Source: Bispira polyomma
Lineage: Eukaryota
DNA: 64,000 bases
Direction: 5' to 3'
NCBI GenBank assembly: GCA_965649765.1
Contig: OZ287749.1
Span: 21,266,001-21,330,000, forward strand
Below the pieces are notes generated by a model, which was not told where the DNA came from, did not search any database, and worked only from the letters and a program-made list of their open reading frames with translations. The translations under genes were made by a program, and so were the position numbers. Positions 56,066 to 63,172 of the stretch are shown here, one piece after another (position 1 is the stretch's first letter; every line of letters starts with the position of its first letter).

Positions 56066-57100
56066 CGTAAACAAATTTTTAATAAGAAATTTTCCTGATC
56101 AGTACCGATCAATCCCACACCAAAGCCTAATAGAAGCATGCAACTGCCATAGCAACTTTTACATCTGTACAGTTTTTCAAAACTTTTTTTAAATTTTACT
56201 ATACATTTCGTGAAACAAGAAAATAACGCACTCAAAGATTCTGTTCTCAAATTTAAATTTAATAAACTGAAGGAGATTTTGAAAAAAGGAAAAACTTGAC
56301 TAATAAAATACAACAAACAAAAATTATAGACATATATGCATGTGTATAATGAAAGATACACGAGCGAAAGACACATTGGTTCTAGTTAAGTGTCATGGAA
56401 AAAGGAGAGAATATATTAAATTTTGATAAGTATAAGTATCCTTATAATATTTAGAAACAGAGGAAATTCATTTATATTAGATTTGGAGATTTTGTGCATC
56501 AGTACTGTACACACCTATTAATATATACAGTGTTAATGTTAAAACTACTATAATACAATAGGTACTATTCACCTTCTTACCAAAAAACTCTCTAATATTG
56601 AGATTTTAATGTCAACATTAATTTAAAAATATTGGGATAAGGGCTTTGATTACAGTATAATTTTAGTACTTTAGGTCCTAGTCAAAAATAAGAAGCTATG
56701 CACTCTAATATTATTTTGATTCAATCATAACTTAATTATAGTCCTCACATTCAATGCTACTGGCACGGTCAAAAGACCCAAAAAATTCTATAATATTTAT
56801 AAATTTTATGTCAACTTTTATTTGCACAAAGAAAAAAAAAAAAAAAAAAATTTATAAAAATAATTGACAGTTCTTTCAAAAAGGGTGTGAGCATTTATTA
56901 CTGAATATGAGGAATTTAATATCAAAGTACTAAAGATTCTAGACAAAGTAAATAACTGTATATTCAATTATTTAAAATATATGGTTATAAATCAACATTA
57001 CACTTGTTACATCATATTGTCTATCAAACTTAGTAACAACTTAAATTCTATCAGCAGTTTTGTTTCATAACTAATGATAACACATTATATATTAGCATGA

Positions 57101-57561
57101 TTAAATGTCAATCCGATAGTGTCTAACTCTTACCAAGATGTTACCTGCCATATTCTTGCCTCTCCAACTTTCGCATGTAAATACAGCATCATTTCGAATT
57201 GACAGTCCTACACCCCATGTAGTGTCTGTTGGATTAGCTTCTACCAATTCAGTTTTGCCTGTACTGGCAAGAAAAGTCCCTCATTTTGGTGGAATTTTTC
57301 GTACATTGCATTGTACATATGATCACTGGCTGTTTTGTTCCAGATATTGACCTTAAAACCCTTGATCTGTCTTCCAAGCTGCTTAGCTGTTACCAGGCAT
57401 TTTGTTTCCATAATTTTTTCGGCAGTCGAGATATCATTAAATTCCATTGCTTTTTTGTACATAATACACTGTTCTGCGCTGTGAAACACTATTCCATCTT
57501 GTGTGAACTGGCTTGGATAGTGATTACTCAATGGAGAAAATTTACTGAAGAAAGCAGTCAT
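57101..57561 (-). other. NADAR (YbiA/DUF1768-like N-glycosidase) domain
   Basis: FFSKFSPLSNHYPSQFTQDGIVFHSAEQCIMYKKAMEFND...AKQLGRQIKGF...W...MYNAMYEKFHQN; frameshift near 57275; FLASTGKTELVEANPTDTTWGVGL...WRGKNMAGNILVRVR. The family motifs SN, sE, KA, K.LGR, KF.Q, LVE...D..WG.G and G.N..G..L..VR are all present. Confidence 0.92.
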
Positions 57562-58306
57562 ACCTCCATTAGTACGTGTGAACACATTTTTAGGCAACAG
57601 TCCCTCCACTGGTACAGTATGTATATTTTCTGTGTTGTATACTTTCCCATTCAAAATCATTGAGTCTACTGAGAGTTTAGGGTTAAGCTCTGGACACAAC
57701 TTTAAGGCTGTGAAAAATGTTGGTACCATTAGTTTTCTTCGTTGTTGTATCTCGTTTGGAAAATCTTCAGTGACGGATATCCCCTTCTTCTTTATTTCAC
57801 CTCTAATTGACTGCTGATCTATCCTTTTGGTGCCAAAATCTTATTACTACTGACCGTAGACGATCTTTTAGGTAAGGCCCAACGAAGTGAATGCTTTCAA
57901 TGTCTCTAGGTGTTAAACTAATCCCTATTCCAGAAAAGAATTTCAGCATACGTTCCTCCAGGTTTTCTCGAGTTAAGTCATTAAAACTATAGAATTTCAA
58001 ATTTTTTTTCCTGCTATACGTTTCTTGTTTCAAAATATAGTCTTTTAATTTTGTGTTTTCAAGCTTCAGTATATTGCATTCATCAGTTAGTTTTGCAATT
58101 TCTTTTCCAGTCTCCTTGATTTGGGGTTCAAGTTCTACCACTCTTTTTATTTCCTCCAGAGCATATTCCACTGATTGTTCAATACTTTCTAATTTAGAAA
58201 GTTTTTTCAAAATAGGGTCCAGTTTTTTATCCAAGAGTTCTGTAAGAGTTTCTATAATTTCCATTTTTTTAGTATTCGCTCTTGTTTGTTTAGATCCTGT
58301 TGACAT
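57101..58306 (-). pseudogene. LINE ORF1p (coiled coil + RRM + CTD) fused to a C-terminal NADAR domain, ~400 aa after correcting two frameshifts
   Basis: Coiled coil, then QETYSRKKNLKFY...DIESIHFVG...RSVVIRF; frameshift near 57806; GISVTEDFPNEIQQRRKLMVP...KLSVDSMILNGKVY; then NADAR in the same frame. Confidence 0.88.
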
Positions 58307-58357
58307 ATTGATACTAGTCTTTATTGTTTTTTCCTACACAATATTTTGTCAAAAGAT

Positions 58358-58440
58358 CACAACAGTATAGTTTTCAAATAATCTGTCTTCTTTGTTAAAT
58401 GAACCCCACAGTATAGTTTTCAAATCATCTGTCCTCTTTC
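58358..58440. repeat. Tandem repeat in the LINE 5' UTR
   Basis: acagtatagttttcaaat(a/c)atctgtc(t/c)tcttt occurs twice, about 46 bp apart. Confidence 0.8.
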
Positions 58441-61400
58441 ACATTTAGAGTTCAGTGTACTGTCAACACATAATGCATCATAGAATAGACCCACAAGTAA
58501 AGAGTGCTGGTAAAACAAGTTCACATTCTGTCCCATATAGAGAAACCCAATTTCATTATAAAGAATGACACAATTTAACACTTTGTTGAATAGAGATACT
58601 AGTCACACCACCAATATTTAAAACTATATTACATTCATTCTTCCCACATGTATTTCAAATTTAAAACATCAATTTTAACATAATCTTTACTTTAAATGTA
58701 ATTAATAGACATATCACACGATTCCTTGTTACTTTAAACGTCTGTTCACCTATACTTCCATTCTAAAATATTGTTTTATCCTTTACATTTTTTAGATTGA
58801 AAAGTGATTGAAAAGTGAAAGCCTAACAGATCAGAAGAATTCTTTCAATTTCAAGCTTCCAATTAAGAGGGCATATTTGTAAAGAAAACAATTCACCAGG
58901 AGTATAGATATTGTTTAATGTAAAGTGGTAATCAATTTAACAGACATCTACTGGAGGGGTTTTACTGTATTTACAAGCGGAAAACTTTAATATTATTTTT
59001 CAGTAATATTGGAATGTCCAGGTTGTAAGAATGACTAAGCAATTTTACCCATGACAAAGACACTACTTGCTTATGTCTGTGGCCACACATTATCAAAATA
59101 AACTAAAGTTCAAACTAAAACATTGGATTCAGTTAATATGGGGATCCTATATGTCTGGTGACAGTAAAACGTTTGTAAAAACAGGCTGTTGAACCCTTTA
59201 AGTGGAAACTTGAGGCACCAAGAAAAATGACTAAACTTAAGCAGAATTTTCAGTTGAAAAGGCTTTTGTGAGACTGTTTTTTCTACATAACAGGGTAAAT
59301 TGAGAGTTAAATACTCTTCACGGGTGGTCACAATAGTTTACGGGTCTGTTGCATTTTTAAAGAACTTATCGACGGAAAATAATATTAAAAACACATACTA
59401 CTTCATGCCTAGAAATTAAAGTACAGAATACAATATTTTATTTTTAAGAAATCTACAATTTATACATTGAAATGTGTGTTAAACAGTATTGTGACCTGGA
59501 TACTATTGTGACTGCCCATGTACTAAAGGGAATTGGAAAGGGGTATTGCTTATTACAACACACAAGCACTATCACTAACCTTCTAAGTTTAAGCTTGAGT
59601 TTATACCTACTTTTGTTTCTCTTTTTCTCTTTTTTTAAAAAGTCATTACCTTTCAAATGTGGACATGTTAGAGTGTATATTTGCTACCAAATCATTACGT
59701 GAAGCCACAAAAAAATTTACATCTTTGAAAAACAACATTTTATTTACACAGTTTATTTTTAAATATTTAGTTAAACATTATTCAAAGCTGCTGTTACCAG
59801 TTGAATACCAACACACAGTTCATAAGATAAAGCAAAATACAAAATACTATTGACATAAAGGCAGAAAAGAAATTTATGATGTTTAAAAATCCACATTGAC
59901 AGAGTTGCTAACAGAACAAACTCCAAGATGCTTGCATAAGCACTCCATCTAGCACTAAATCAGGCCCCCCTGATTCACCAACACGATCCATACATTAAAG
60001 TGTTTGCATTACCACTCGTTTTTGTTCTAAATTACATTATCATCTTTAAAGGATGGGGATGTATGACGTTAGTGTCTGTAGTATTGACAATGTTAATGAT
60101 GATCAAGATGCAGTATTTTTCACTGCCAGGACAAATTATAAGTATATATATGCCACTGCAAATATAGGCAGGGTAAAGTTAGTGTAGCTTTTTGTATATT
60201 GTTAATGCTGGAGTTTTCCCAATGGGGGCTGTATGACAGTTCACTTAAAGGTGGACAGGCTTCTATATTTCATATGAAAGCAGACAATTTTCCCTGGTAC
60301 AGGGTCATGTTAGAGAAATATGTATCAGTATTCAACGCTGAAGAGTTGTCAGTCATATTGGTTGTAGAACCTCAAGCGGCACACCTGCGCAGCAGTATGC
60401 ACACACAGTTACATTTAGTTTGAGACGCCAAGTGGGATATGACTTCACTTTGGGCGGCAGTTTTCCCACTGCTGCAGTTTGGGCAGGTTCGGATCACAAA
60501 ATTAACCTTTGGCACATAGCAAAATCTCAATCGGAGTGGTCTCTGGAAAGGGAAATCCTGACACCAACTTTTGCCAGCCGAATCTGACAAAACAGACTGT
60601 TATGTGTAGCTTTCGGGTGCGTGTCAAAGGTACTTGCGTAGGGATATCTTCCAAATACCAACAGAACACTATATGTAAAGCACTCATGTGCCGTTTTGTT
60701 TTGACCACTCTTGTTAACACCAAAGCTTGCAAGGTCAGGTTTTCTCCCTTATTTGGCATTTCCTATAAATCATAATTGGTTGTTATTTCGCTAGGAATTA
60801 CACCAGGTCTCCTAAAAAAACTGTTGCAACAGAGTATTTGTCTGGTTATTGTGTTTTATTTGACAGTGTGTCATAAAAATAAATGTCTGACTCGTGTACA
60901 GGATGTGTTTATTTTGTGTCAGATGTTTGACAGCTACTTCTGTATTACACTTCCTTGTTGTAATATAGTTTGCAATGGTGACAGTACAGTCACGGGTACT
61001 TCACTTCCTCATGCTAACACTGGTTACTGGTATTGGCACATATTATGTCCCTCACAACGTTTATGTAAATAGATAATGTATATACAAGTCACTTGTGTGA
61101 TGTAATCAAATTTTAAAGATCTTGTATGCTTGGTTTAATTTCTACATCCTGTGTTTTTATCTTAGTTTATAAATTGTTTAATGATTAAAGGTGCTTTGCA
61201 TAGCACTTAGTTATATGTATGTATACTTACTGCTTGTGTCAGTTGTGGGCTCAGTTTGTTTTGACACAAAGGTTAAACATGGTTCTACCAGACTTAATAC
61301 AGTCATACCTAGGGTTGGTAATTCAGTTTCCCCTTTACTTTATGTTAGTACACAAGAACTTGTTAGCAGGGTCCAAGCTCTCTGCTCTATTATTACTGAG

Positions 61401-61679
61401 TTGTTAAATTTACATATCCTGATGGGATTCTGGTTAATGTATAGTTGTGTTACATGCTGTGTCACCTCTGTGTATTGTAAGGAGGGCAAAACCTGCTGTG
61501 GGTTGGTAACAAAGGCTGTGTATACTTGTTAATTTCTCTCAGTTATGTTTTCTATATGGTGGTTTTATATTCTGCTTATGACCCTCAGAGACTTGTATTA
61601 CAATTACAGTCAGTGTTTTCAGTGTGTGTAAGGTCATTCAGGAATCAAATCAGTCACACCAGTAGTGACATAGTGCACA

Positions 61680-63040
61680 ACATCAGTTTGCCTAGTTATT
61701 ATAATGGACATTATGTTACCTGTCAATATAACCACCCTTCAGCAGTTGAGTACCCTGACCACATTACACATTATATCACAACTGAATGTAATTATAATGC
61801 TATTGAAGGTCCTTATGGGGAGGTTCCCTTTCCCAATTTACATATTTTTCCTATGCTGACTAGGCATAAGCCTAATTCACAAAATAGAAGAGTTATTATA
61901 GATTTGTCATGGCCCAGGGAGCATTCAGTTGATGCTAGTGTTGCTAAAGATGTGATTTTACATATACACTTTGTACTTACATATCTGGCCATAGATTATA
62001 TGATGGACTATATTAAGCAGTGTGGTTCCAATTGTTATCTGTTCAAGGTAGACCTTCAGCACGCATTTCGTAAATTGAGAGTAGACCCTTATGATTTCCA
62101 CTTGTTAGGTTCATATTGGCGAATGCTTACTATATTGATACAGCGGTACCCTTTGGCTTTAGGCATGGAAGCCATTATTGCTAGCGAATGACAGACAGTA
62201 TTAGGTATATAATGGCTTAGCTAGGTCATGTGGTTTACAACTATATTGATGACATAATTGGTATTCACAGCTCGTTAGAAGCTGCCACTTCAGCCTTTAA
62301 TTTCCTACTCAAATTGCGCAAGGAGCTTGGTCTTCCAGACAATCCGTCCAAATTGGAATCTCCAGGTAAAGCTATAACATGTTTGGGCTTTCAAATTGAT
62401 GTAACAGCAGGTACTCTTAGTCTTCCTCCGGATAAACTTACATAAATTACTAACCTTTGTATAGAATGGAGTGTTAAGATGTATGACACCAAGAACAAAG
62501 TATTGTAGGAAAACTATTGTACATTAGTAAATGTATTAAACCAGCTAGACTTTTTGTTAACCGCATTTTGCAAGTACTGGTTTAAGCTACCTAAATCATT
62601 CATTGCGGACATAAAGTGGTTCATGACATTTCTTAGCCAGTTTAATAGTGTAGTCTTATATGACAAACCTGTTATCCACAATGAAGTTGTCTATGTAGAG
62701 GCCAGCTTACCTGGTCTAGGGGCAGTTTATAAACAGGTTGGGTATCATTTAGAGTTAGACCAGTTAGCTGATCACCCTGCTATTATTGTTCATCTTGAAA
62801 TGCTTAATGTATACACTGCTTTCACCAGATGGTTGCCTGCATTTATTAACTCTAATGTAATCCTGTATTGTGATAACAACATGGTGGTAAATATTTTAAA
62901 TTTCCATAGGGGGAAAGACCCCTATCTTCTTCAAGTTGCTAGACACATATGGATCCTTACGGCCACTCATAATATCACACTGCAGGTCAGACTTGTGCTG
63001 GTAATGTTGGGGCAGACCTCTTATCTCGGTATTCAGACTT
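61680..63040 (+). pseudogene. Ngaro-like reverse transcriptase and RNase H
   Basis: NHPSAVEYPDHI, RRVIIDLSWP, LFKVDLQHAFRKLRVDP, PFG.RHGS, YNYIDD; RNase H motifs VEASLPGLGA, HLEMLN, YCDN. Confidence 0.9.
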
Positions 63041-63172
63041 AAGGAAAAAGACTAAGTTTCATGAGTTGTTTCCACATGTACAGTTCAGTCAGGTTTCTTG
63101 TCATGCAACCGCCCTTAATTGGGACATTTAAGGTTCTATATTAGTTATGTATATTTTCTCTTTGTGTTGTAG

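What the first reader, a model, noticed from the sequence alone, without database searches (positions are those of the whole stretch)
57101..58306. LINE ORF1p fused to a NADAR (ADP-ribose N-glycosidase) domain: candidate retrotransposon anti-ADP-ribosylation module
Seen in sequence: an L1-type ORF1p (coiled coil, RRM, CTD) runs in frame, with no stop or intron between the CTD and NADAR, into a complete NADAR domain. The family's conserved residues are all retained. The fusion lies inside a TSD-bounded L1/Tx1 element, so NADAR is cargo of the mobile unit. Established knowledge: NADAR proteins include YbiA-type N-glycosidases and the antitoxins that remove ADP-ribose from guanine modified by DarT1. 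Some bivalves encode pierisin-like guanine DNA ADP-ribosyltransferases (CARP-1), and PARP-family proteins act on L1 retrotransposition. Inference: ORF1p coats the element RNA in many copies, so a tethered NADAR could strip ADP-ribose from the RNA or the nascent cDNA, or remove damaged nucleotide metabolites in the RNP. That would be a eukaryotic transposon parallel to phage anti-DarT counter-defence. The ORF1 accessory domains I know of are esterase, PHD and zinc knuckles. I know of no functional study of a NADAR fusion, but novelty needs a literature and Repbase check.
Basis: partly seen in the sequence, partly recalled or inferred. Interest (0 to 1): 0.92.

Follow-up and report, generated by a model that had tools for sequence, protein, structure and literature searches.

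The report
Dead LINE copy with NADAR-tailed ORF1
This is a broken copy of a jumping gene (an L1-type LINE) whose RNA-coating ORF1 protein ends in a conserved NADAR enzyme domain, a kind that cuts ADP-ribose off DNA and RNA bases. The design is real, very abundant and under selection, but it was already noted once for oyster LINEs and its role is untested.

Summary
On the minus strand, 58306-57101 encodes a coiled coil, RRM and CTD homologous to L1 ORF1p, abutting a full-length NADAR domain (Pfam PF08719; open sister copy E 7.8e-42).

- **This copy is dead.** It has short frame-breaking deletions in ORF1, a broken ORF2 and a 44-nt 5' truncation. It keeps a 10-bp target-site duplication and a poly(A) tail.
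- **The fusion is not a one-off.** Sister copies carry an open 388-404 aa ORF1-NADAR frame. The genome holds over 2,000 candidate NADAR loci, and 29 of the 30 best sit directly behind an ORF1 N-terminus. More than 100 diverged protein clusters in public data share the architecture.
- **NADAR is under selection.** Lineage-shared substitutions give omega about 0.32, against about 0.9 for private ones. Catalytic Glu/Glu/Asp are near-invariant.
- **Fold.** An AlphaFold model (pLDDT 95) matches NADAR 8bau (Z 23) and the human L1 ORF1p trimer (Z 10).

The anti-ADP-ribosylation role is plausible but untested. No DarT or pierisin/Scabin-like writer was found, though neither search had a positive control.

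Novelty is limited. PMC12477816 (2025) already notes NADAR in ORF1 of oyster Tx1 LINEs. This scan had already flagged the same fusion on other pieces of this genome: 13 notes, three of the eight shown followed up, all with the same verdict.

The parts
58814..58823 (-). 5' target-site duplication GGCTTTCACT
   Evidence: Identical 10-mer at both ends of the element.
58799..58813 (-). 15-nt filler at the 5' junction; it repeats the adjacent 11-mer
   Evidence: Lies between the TSD and the first base shared with sister copies.
58307..58798 (-). 5' UTR, truncated by about 44 nt; contains a 46-nt tandem duplication at 58345-58439
   Evidence: Homology to 13 sister copies starts at 58798, and those copies extend about 44 nt further upstream. 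Tandem repeat.
57101..58306 (-). ORF1 (coiled coil-RRM-CTD-NADAR), broken by short deletions in this copy
   Evidence: Open 388-404 aa versions exist in sister copies.
58013..58276 (-). ORF1 coiled coil (residues about 11-98)
   Evidence: Single long helix 11-98 in the AF2 model. The end of the coil aligns to the L1 ORF1p trimer.
57766..58009 (-). ORF1 RRM (residues about 100-182), with a 5-nt deletion near 57811/57812
   Evidence: Profile hits 2w7a and 2ykp. VIA match to 2w7a: Z 9.9 over model residues 98-183. Deletion.
57577..57756 (-). ORF1 CTD (residues about 186-246), abutting NADAR
   Evidence: 2ldy RRM-CTD E 7e-11. 2yko_A aligns to model residues 55-246.
57104..57561 (-). NADAR domain (residues about 251-403), with a 7-nt deletion near 57276/57277 and a 4-nt deletion near 57124/57125
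   Evidence: PF08719 in two pieces. TIGR02464 scores 141 bits on the open copy. 8bau Z 23.1 and YbiA Z 17.1. Deletions.
56075..57100 (-). Inter-ORF spacer, about 1.0 kb, AT-rich, varies by indels between copies
   Evidence: GC 0.26-0.30. Alignment breaks between copies. No Pfam hit for the only ORF there.
52358..56074 (-). ORF2 (AP-endonuclease, reverse transcriptase, C-terminal zinc-binding region), in at least five frame pieces
   Evidence: ORF list. RVT_1 E 8e-27, zf-RVT and a weak Exo_endo_phos hit. Human L1 ORF2p 8uw3 E 3.4e-43 over 705 residues.
51991..52357 (-). 3' UTR
   Evidence: Shared with over 35 sister 3' ends.
51961..51990 (-). Poly(A) tail, 30 nt
51951..51960 (-). 3' target-site duplication GGCTTTCACT

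Best explanation
Shown: 51961-58798 (minus strand) is a dead, slightly 5'-truncated insertion of an L1-superfamily LINE. Its first gene encodes an L1-type ORF1p (coiled coil, RRM, CTD) whose CTD runs directly into a YbiA-type NADAR domain. The fusion is the normal state of this family and of many diverged LINE families. It is inherited as one unit and kept by purifying selection, with the catalytic Glu/Glu/Asp intact. Inferred (about 45% likely): ORF1p trimerises through the coiled coil and coats the element's RNA, so the particle carries many NADAR active sites next to the RNA and the nascent cDNA. There the domain works as an N-glycosidase that removes ADP-ribose from guanine or cytosine bases. 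Such adducts would otherwise block reverse transcription or translation. The writer is unknown. It could be a host ADP-ribosyltransferase or a pierisin-type toxin from environmental or symbiotic bacteria.
For: Anatomy: Pfam NADAR; TIGR02464 above its cut-off; family profile hits NADAR 8bau at 2.9e-38, YbiA at 2.7e-27 and human L1 ORF1p at 3.7e-16. AF2 with 112 sequences gives pLDDT 95.1 and pTM 0.83. VIA gives 8bau Z 23.1 with rmsd 1.8 over 163 residues, and 2yko Z 10.1 over 185 residues; the two domains abut at residues 239-246. ORF2 is L1 ORF2p-like. TSD and poly(A) are present.

Family-wide: at least 15 copies at 89-96% identity. Open 404, 390 and 388 aa frames exist. There are 2147 candidate NADAR loci; all 150 scored exceed 136 bits, many in open frames of 400-460 aa. 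29 of the 30 best loci have an ORF1 N-terminus directly upstream. Families at 33-54% identity share the architecture. Nearly all of the best 150 representatives at 50% clustering are full-length matches of about 400-480 aa. NADAR-ORF1 is followed by an RT ORF in every place looked up elsewhere.

Selection: shared substitutions give omega 0.32 in NADAR (p 0.006) and 0.34 in the N-terminal part, against 0.89 and 0.98 for singletons. Pairwise omega between open copies is 0.38-0.42. NADAR is the most conserved ORF1 segment. E280 is kept in 112/112, E360 in 111/112, D365 in 106/112 and W324 in 111/112. These map to E43, E125, D130 and W89 of the P. nicotianae enzyme.

One unit: the spacing from CTD D216 to NADAR S262 is 45 residues in 93/112. 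Nearest neighbours of the two halves agree in 33/112, against about 1 by chance.

Biochemistry from papers: NADARs of all tested families, including YbiA types and an animal one, remove guanosine- and cytidine-linked ADP-ribose from DNA and RNA (PMC11543638, PMC11125620, PMC11833690, PMC12945103).
Against: No activity, substrate or expression data exist for any LINE NADAR. No DarT or Scabin/pierisin-like gene was detected in this genome, though neither search had a positive control. So there is no known writer for the proposed substrate. By sequence the domain sits best in TIGR02464, whose one physiologically characterised member (E. coli YbiA) acts on small-molecule riboflavin intermediates (PMC11543638). 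R93 of the P. nicotianae enzyme, an ADP-ribose contact, is mostly Ala or Cys in the LINE family. Trimerisation and RNA coating are inferred from L1 ORF1p homology only.
Confidence: 0.45

Rival explanations
1. The NADAR domain is a small-molecule N-glycosidase, as YbiA is on riboflavin intermediates. It clears reactive or damaged ribosyl compounds or nucleotides near the particle and does not act on nucleic-acid adducts.
For: The best curated family match is TIGR02464, 'riboflavin biosynthesis intermediates N-glycosidase', at 141 bits against a cut-off of 73.7. The domain has the YbiA-type last-strand Glu. The ADP-ribose contact R93 is not conserved. No writer was found.
Against: There is no evident benefit to a retrotransposon from a riboflavin-pathway side activity. 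The domain is tethered with fixed spacing to an RNA-binding module in hundreds of lineages, which points to a polymer-bound substrate. YbiA-type enzymes also de-ADP-ribosylate G and C in DNA and RNA in vitro (PMC11125620, PMC12945103).
Confidence: 0.2
2. The domain processes some other NAD- or ADP-ribose-derived group on the element's RNA, for example an unusual 5' cap or a by-product of RNA repair or ligation. It would be an RNA-maturation enzyme rather than a counter-defence.
For: PMC12477816 relays the hypothesis that NADAR domains in RNA viruses work in RNA processing, and suggests the same for the oyster and Ectocarpus elements. The domain is fused to the RNA-binding protein of the element.
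Against: No such NADAR activity has been shown. [quoted passage not shown]
Confidence: 0.15
3. The domain has lost catalysis. It serves as an extra nucleic-acid-binding or packing module of ORF1p.
For: High pTM for the whole chain suggests a fixed packing against the CTD. Linker length is fixed.
Against: The residues that matter only for catalysis are the best conserved: E280 in 112/112, E360 in 111/112, D365 in 106/112.
Confidence: 0.05
4. NADAR is next to ORF1 by accident in this copy, through a chance insertion, a host exon or an assembly error.
For: None found. The window copy itself is frameshifted.
Against: The same junction is found in at least 15 sister copies, in many diverged families and in other assemblies. 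Omega is below 1.
Confidence: 0.01

Closest known systems
Tx1 LINE families of Crassostrea gigas with a NADAR domain in ORF1 (Repbase entries, noted in PMC12477816, Genome Biol 2025)
   Same: LINE ORF1 protein carrying a YbiA-family NADAR domain, in a marine invertebrate. No function has been tested.
   Different: The window belongs to a different family in an unnamed 1.04-Gb genome. I could not compare it directly with the Repbase sequences or place its RT in the Tx1 clade. The paper gives only a few sentences, with no selection, structure or copy-number analysis.
Human and mouse L1 ORF1p (PDB 2ykp, 2yko, 2ldy, 2w7a)
   Same: Coiled coil, RRM and CTD in the same order, upstream of an APE-RT ORF2. 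Profile E 3.7e-16 and Z 10.1 over 185 residues.
   Different: Mammalian ORF1p ends after the CTD, whereas here a 155-residue enzyme domain follows directly. Identity is only about 19%. There is no Pfam Transposase_22 hit. The inter-ORF spacer is about 1 kb.
Phytophthora nicotianae NADAR (8bau) and E. coli YbiA (2b3w)
   Same: Same fold (Z 23.1 and 17.1) and the same catalytic Glu/Glu/Asp.
   Different: Those are free-standing proteins. The 8bau loop insertion is absent. The contact residue R93 is not kept.
Orphan NADAR antitoxin-like enzymes of T4-like phages that neutralise DarTG1 (PMC11825919)
   Same: A mobile genetic parasite carrying a NADAR without its toxin partner.
   Different: Phage NADARs have His at the last-strand position (PMC11125620), whereas the LINE domain has Glu. 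The phage's opponent DarT1 is known, but none is known here.
Ectocarpus Gypsy LTR elements with NADAR at the N-terminus of Pol (PMC12477816)
   Same: A retrotransposon-borne YbiA-family NADAR.
   Different: A different element class, a different host protein (Pol, not ORF1) and bacterial-like closest relatives. The authors read these as acquisitions of NADAR by diverse retrotransposons.
Other ORF1 accessory domains (esterase, PHD, CCHC knuckles); from my own knowledge of ORF1 classifications, not tested here
   Same: An enzyme or reader domain appended to a LINE ORF1.
   Different: A different fold and chemistry.

Membership tests
NADAR superfamily (PF08719) | Profile match above the curated cut-off over the full domain | tested here: met
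   143.7 bits against a cut-off of 35.1, profile 9-162 of 163, on the open copy. The window copy gives 69.6 and 50 bits in two frames.
NADAR superfamily (PF08719) | YbiA fold | tested here: met
   AF2 pLDDT 95. 8bau Z 23.1 with rmsd 1.8 over 163 residues, and 2b3w Z 17.1.
NADAR superfamily (PF08719) | Catalytic residues (P. nicotianae E43, E125, D130) present | tested here: met
   E280 in 112/112, E360 in 111/112, D365 in 106/112. All are present in the window copy.
NADAR superfamily (PF08719) | N-glycosidase or ADP-ribosylhydrolase activity | not testable with these tools
   Needs a biochemical assay.
YbiA family of NADARs (as against BC4488/DarG1 and phage types) | Glu at the conserved last-strand position (Asp in BC4488, His in phage NADARs; PMC11125620) | tested here: met
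   E360 in 111/112. TIGR02464 scores 141 bits against a cut-off of 73.7.
DarT1-NADAR (DarTG1) toxin-antitoxin pair | NADAR encoded next to a DarT ADP-ribosyltransferase | tested here: not met
   The neighbours are LINE ORF2 and spacer. PF14487 gave no hit in the whole genome, but without a positive control.
DarT1-NADAR (DarTG1) toxin-antitoxin pair | Asp at the last-strand catalytic position | tested here: not met
   Glu.
L1-type ORF1p (coiled coil-RRM-CTD) | Sequence homology to solved L1 ORF1p | tested here: met
   Family profile against 2ykp 3.7e-16, 2ldy 7e-11 and 2w7a 4.3e-7.
L1-type ORF1p (coiled coil-RRM-CTD) | Pfam L1 ORF1 (Transposase_22) models match | tested here: not met
   No such hit at E up to 1. 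The family is too diverged for these models, and the profile and fold evidence above outweighs this.
L1-type ORF1p (coiled coil-RRM-CTD) | Domain order and fold: long N-terminal coil, then RRM, then CTD | tested here: met
   Helix 11-98, RRM 100-182, CTD 186-246. 2yko_A Z 10.1 over model residues 55-246.
L1-type ORF1p (coiled coil-RRM-CTD) | Homotrimer, RNA binding in cis | not tested
   Inferred from homology only.
L1-superfamily LINE (L1/Tx1) | APE plus RT ORF2 related to L1 ORF2p, poly(A) tail and TSD | tested here: met
   (8uw3 3.4e-43 over 705 residues). Intact 1241-1260 aa APE-RT ORF2 follows related ORF1-NADAR genes elsewhere.
Tx1 clade specifically | RT groups with Tx1 reference elements in a phylogeny (RTclass1/Repbase) | not testable with these tools
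   No reference LINE set was on hand. The Tx1 label rests on PMC12477816 for the oyster families. Flanks of 13 copies are unrelated, so there is no sign of site-specific insertion.

The most novel reading that the evidence does not exclude
LINE-borne NADAR is a true counter-defence. It erases base-linked ADP-ribose placed on retroelement RNA or cDNA by a still unknown ADP-ribosyltransferase, either of the animal host or a pierisin-type toxin from associated bacteria. This would reveal nucleic-acid ADP-ribosylation as a restriction system for retroelements in animals. A corollary is that many 'animal NADAR genes' counted in surveys may really be LINE ORF1 genes.
Probability: 0.2. Interest if true: 0.85.

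Novelty: new member of a known kind. Interest (0 to 1): 0.5.

Why it matters
NADARs are the only hydrolases so far shown to reverse guanosine base ADP-ribosylation on RNA (PMC11833690), and their role in animals is open (PMC11125620). Here thousands of LINE copies, and over 100 diverged lineages in public data, tether this enzyme to the protein that coats retrotransposon RNA and keep its active site under selection. That gives a concrete, testable setting for nucleic-acid ADP-ribosylation in animals. It also warns that animal NADAR counts may largely reflect transposons. The window copy itself is an ordinary dead insertion.

Tried and rejected
- Single-sequence AF2 gave pLDDT 40 and was useless. 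It was replaced by a run on a 112-sequence alignment.
- Pfam gave no L1 ORF1 hit. A profile search against PDB sequences was needed.
- Word-indexed searches with the NADAR part alone and with the N-terminal part alone returned only 9 and 4 proteins. They said nothing about unfused relatives or the donor of the domain.
- The listing of cluster members gave no names or taxa, so taxonomic range rests only on Atlas labels (Annelida) and the oyster paper.
- A Mantel correlation between the two halves was uninformative because divergence is saturated (r 0.08). It was replaced by nearest-neighbour concordance.
- Searches for DarT and Scabin-like families found nothing. Their controls rang nowhere, so absence is not shown.
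All protein work used naturally open copies.
- Complex prediction was not used, because trimerisation would not change the verdict.
Full report
**1. What is at the coordinates**

The feature is on the minus strand. An ATG at 58306 opens a frame that runs to a stop at 57803. A second frame carries 57837-57244, and the first frame resumes at 57280-57104 with a stop at 57103-57101.

Pfam finds NADAR (PF08719) in the second and third pieces, at E 4.8e-19 (profile 9-107) and E 5.1e-13 (profile 110-160). The domain is therefore complete at the sequence level but split by a frameshift.

Compared with a naturally open sister copy, the window copy has three short deletions:
- 5 nt near 57811/12, at codon 166 in the RRM.
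- 7 nt near 57276/77, at codon 346 in NADAR.
- 4 nt near 57124/25, at codon 399. The altered C-terminal tail it produces is also seen in another copy.

**2. The element**

- Homology to 13 sister copies begins at 58798. Those copies extend about 44 nt further upstream to a common start, so this copy is slightly 5'-truncated.
- The 3' end is a 30-nt poly(A) at 51961-51990.
- The 10-mer GGCTTTCACT flanks both ends, at 58823-58814 and 51960-51951, with 15 nt of filler at the 5' junction.
- ORF2 (56074-52358) is in at least five frame pieces. It carries RVT_1 (E 8e-27), zf-RVT and a weak endonuclease hit.
- Its 752-aa piece matches human L1 ORF2p over 705 residues, at E 3.4e-43.
- About 1.0 kb of AT-rich spacer separates the two ORFs.

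This is a dead insertion of an L1-superfamily LINE. I could not test whether it belongs to the Tx1 clade, because no reference LINE set was available. The flanks of the copies are unrelated to each other, so there is no sign of site-specific insertion.

**3. The fusion is the family's normal state**

- The genome (1.04 Gb, 75 contigs) holds at least 15 copies of the ORF1 region at 89-96% identity.
- Three copies have an open ORF1-NADAR frame of 404, 390 and 388 aa. The 404-aa protein gives NADAR at E 7.8e-42 over profile 9-162 of 163, and TIGR02464 at 141 bits against a cut-off of 73.7.
- A whole-genome scan with PF08719 gave 2147 first-look candidates. All 150 scored exceeded 136 bits, and many lay in open frames of 400-460 aa.
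- Of the 30 best loci, 29 have ORF1 N-terminal homology directly upstream on the same strand. The one exception is a 5'-truncated copy.
- These loci belong to several families only 33-54% identical to the window family, with the same architecture end to end.

Outside this genome:
- 401-406 aa proteins at 45-69% identity cover the whole query.
- An exhaustive profile search of 1.84 billion representatives listed 150 best hits (E of 3e-83 or better). Nearly all were full-length matches of about 400-480 aa.
- In every other assembly place looked up, the NADAR-ORF1 gene is followed on the same strand by an RT ORF, with an endonuclease domain in two of them.
- Atlas look-alikes are 415-489 aa NADAR clusters labelled Eukaryota/Annelida.

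**4. The N-terminal part is an L1-type ORF1p**

Pfam's L1 ORF1 models did not hit. A profile of 112 diverged family members (A2) gave these PDB sequence matches:

| Target | PDB | E-value |
|---|---|---|
| NADAR, P. nicotianae | 8bau | 2.9e-38 |
| E. coli YbiA | 2b3w | 2.7e-27 |
| Human L1 ORF1p | 2ykp | 3.7e-16 |
| L1 ORF1p RRM-CTD | 2ldy | 7e-11 |
| L1 ORF1p RRM | 2w7a | 4.3e-7 |

AlphaFold2 with that alignment gave pLDDT 95.1 and pTM 0.83. The model has a single helix at 11-98, an RRM at 100-182, a CTD at 186-246, and then NADAR.

Structural alignment gave:
- 8bau: Z 23.1, rmsd 1.8 Å over 163 residues, model residues 239-404.
- YbiA: Z 17.1.
- Human L1 ORF1p trimer chain 2yko_A: Z 10.1 over 185 residues, model residues 55-246.

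Foldseek agrees. The two modules abut without a long linker.

**5. Catalytic competence and selection**

Residues that bind ADP-ribose or act in catalysis in the P. nicotianae enzyme are E43, K50, K75, R79, W89, E125, D130 and W133 (PMC11543638). Through the alignment they map to E280, K287, K310, R314, W324, E360, D365 and W368.

Conservation across the 112 sequences:

| Residue | Kept in |
|---|---|
| E280 | 112/112 |
| E360 | 111/112 |
| D365 | 106/112 |
| W324 | 111/112 |
| K287 | 103/112 |

- The last-strand residue is Glu. This is the mark of the YbiA family, as against Asp in DarT1-linked NADARs and His in phage NADARs (PMC11125620).
- One contact residue, R93, is not kept.
- NADAR is the most conserved segment of ORF1, with mean pairwise identity 0.38, against 0.31-0.33 for the RRM and CTD and 0.20 for the coil.

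Within the window family I split substitutions in 15 copies into two classes:

| Class | Interpretation | Omega, N-terminal part | Omega, NADAR |
|---|---|---|---|
| Singletons | Decay after insertion | 0.98 | 0.89 |
| Shared by two or more copies | Change in the replicating lineage | 0.34 (p 9e-4) | 0.32 (p 6e-3) |

Pairwise omega between open copies is 0.38-0.42 in this family. In a younger 416-aa family it is about 0.1-0.3 in the deeper comparisons. The enzyme domain is therefore under the same purifying selection as the RNA-binding part.

**6. One unit, one origin**

- The distance from the CTD's D216 to NADAR's S262 is 45 residues in 93 of 112 sequences, with a range of 43-50.
- The nearest neighbour by the RRM-CTD part is also the nearest by NADAR in 33 of 112 cases, against about 1 expected by chance. 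It is within the top five in 61 cases.
- This fits a single old fusion inherited vertically within LINE lineages, not repeated capture.

**7. How it most likely works**

Shown: the architecture, its spread, the intact active site and the selection.

Inferred from L1 ORF1p homology: trimerisation and coating of the element's RNA, which would put many NADAR sites beside the RNA and nascent cDNA.

From published work:
- NADARs from all tested families, including YbiA types and a sponge enzyme, remove ADP-ribose from guanosine and cytidine in DNA and RNA.
- They are the only hydrolases shown to reverse guanosine base ADP-ribosylation on RNA.
- They are inactive on phosphate-linked RNA ADP-ribosylation (PMC11543638, PMC11125620, PMC11833690, PMC12945103).

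My best reading, at about 45%, is therefore a tethered base de-ADP-ribosylase protecting the template or cDNA.

The weak point is the writer:
- DarT (PF14487) and Scabin/pierisin-like (PF22596) models found nothing in this genome, though the controls rang nowhere either.
- PMC12945103 proposes that NADARs of marine invertebrates guard against G/C-ADP-ribosylating toxins of associated Actinomycetes. That would supply a non-host writer.

Rivals are a small-molecule N-glycosidase role as for YbiA (20%), another RNA-processing role (15%), and a non-catalytic module (5%). A chance juxtaposition is excluded.

**8. Novelty**

- Full-text searches for NADAR, YbiA or DUF1768 with retrotransposon, ORF1 or LINE found one relevant paper.
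- That paper is PMC12477816 (Genome Biol 2025). It states that ORF1 proteins of several Tx1 LINE families of Crassostrea gigas in Repbase appear to carry YbiA-family NADAR domains, as do some Ectocarpus Gypsy Pol proteins, and that their role is unclear.
- The fusion as such is therefore already on record. No functional, structural or selection study was found.
- This scan had also flagged the same fusion on other pieces of this genome: 13 notes. Three of the eight shown were followed up, all with the same verdict. I re-derived each point independently here.
- The window adds one more dead copy of one more family, so I class it as a new member of a known kind.

**9. Limits**

- No further genome DNA could be fetched, so ORF2 integrity in sister copies is unknown.
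- The donor of the NADAR domain was not traced.

Noticed in passing
window 56075-57100 (-); L032 9207-10893; place of P0100: The spacer between ORF1-NADAR and ORF2 is unusually long: about 1.0 kb here (AT-rich, with indel differences between copies) and 1.7 kb in L032. In the place holding P0100, a 519-aa ORF without Pfam hits lies between the two genes. How ORF2 is translated is open.
   Followed up: partly
window 61526-63042 (+): Three consecutive ORFs (221, 71 and 162 aa) show reverse-transcriptase-like motifs by eye (a YIDDI box). They gave no Pfam hit at E up to 0.01. This may be a degenerate retroelement of another class.
   Followed up: partly
window 58345-58439 (-): A 46-nt unit is duplicated in tandem (2.1 copies, 85% match) in the 5' UTR just upstream of the ORF1 start.
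   Followed up: no
window 58799-58813 (-): 15 nt of filler between the 5' TSD and the truncated element end. It repeats the adjacent 11-mer CACTTTTCAAT, a typical untidy 5' junction of a truncated LINE insertion.
   Followed up: no
L036-L047, L054 (own genome): A different ORF1-NADAR family has ten copies with open ORF1 frames (nine of 416 aa, one of 402 aa) that are at least 97.6% identical in protein. Omega is about 0.1-0.3 in its deeper comparisons. This points to very recent activity of NADAR-bearing LINEs in this genome.
   Followed up: partly
P0009: A 4240-aa predicted protein has seven separate matches to the ORF1-NADAR profile. It is probably a gene model run through tandem or nested LINE copies.
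   Followed up: no
(Atlas, features): Beyond NADAR clusters, the nearest look-alikes (score 0.79, lead only) are arthropod clusters with Baculo_FP_2nd (PF25298) and a large chordate cluster without a family. This may reflect kinship of the ORF1 N-terminal half with FP25K-like proteins.
   Followed up: no
L006 and L011, upstream flanks: Two sister copies share the same about 100 nt upstream of the element start. Either both sit in another repeat or they belong to a segmental duplication.
   Followed up: no
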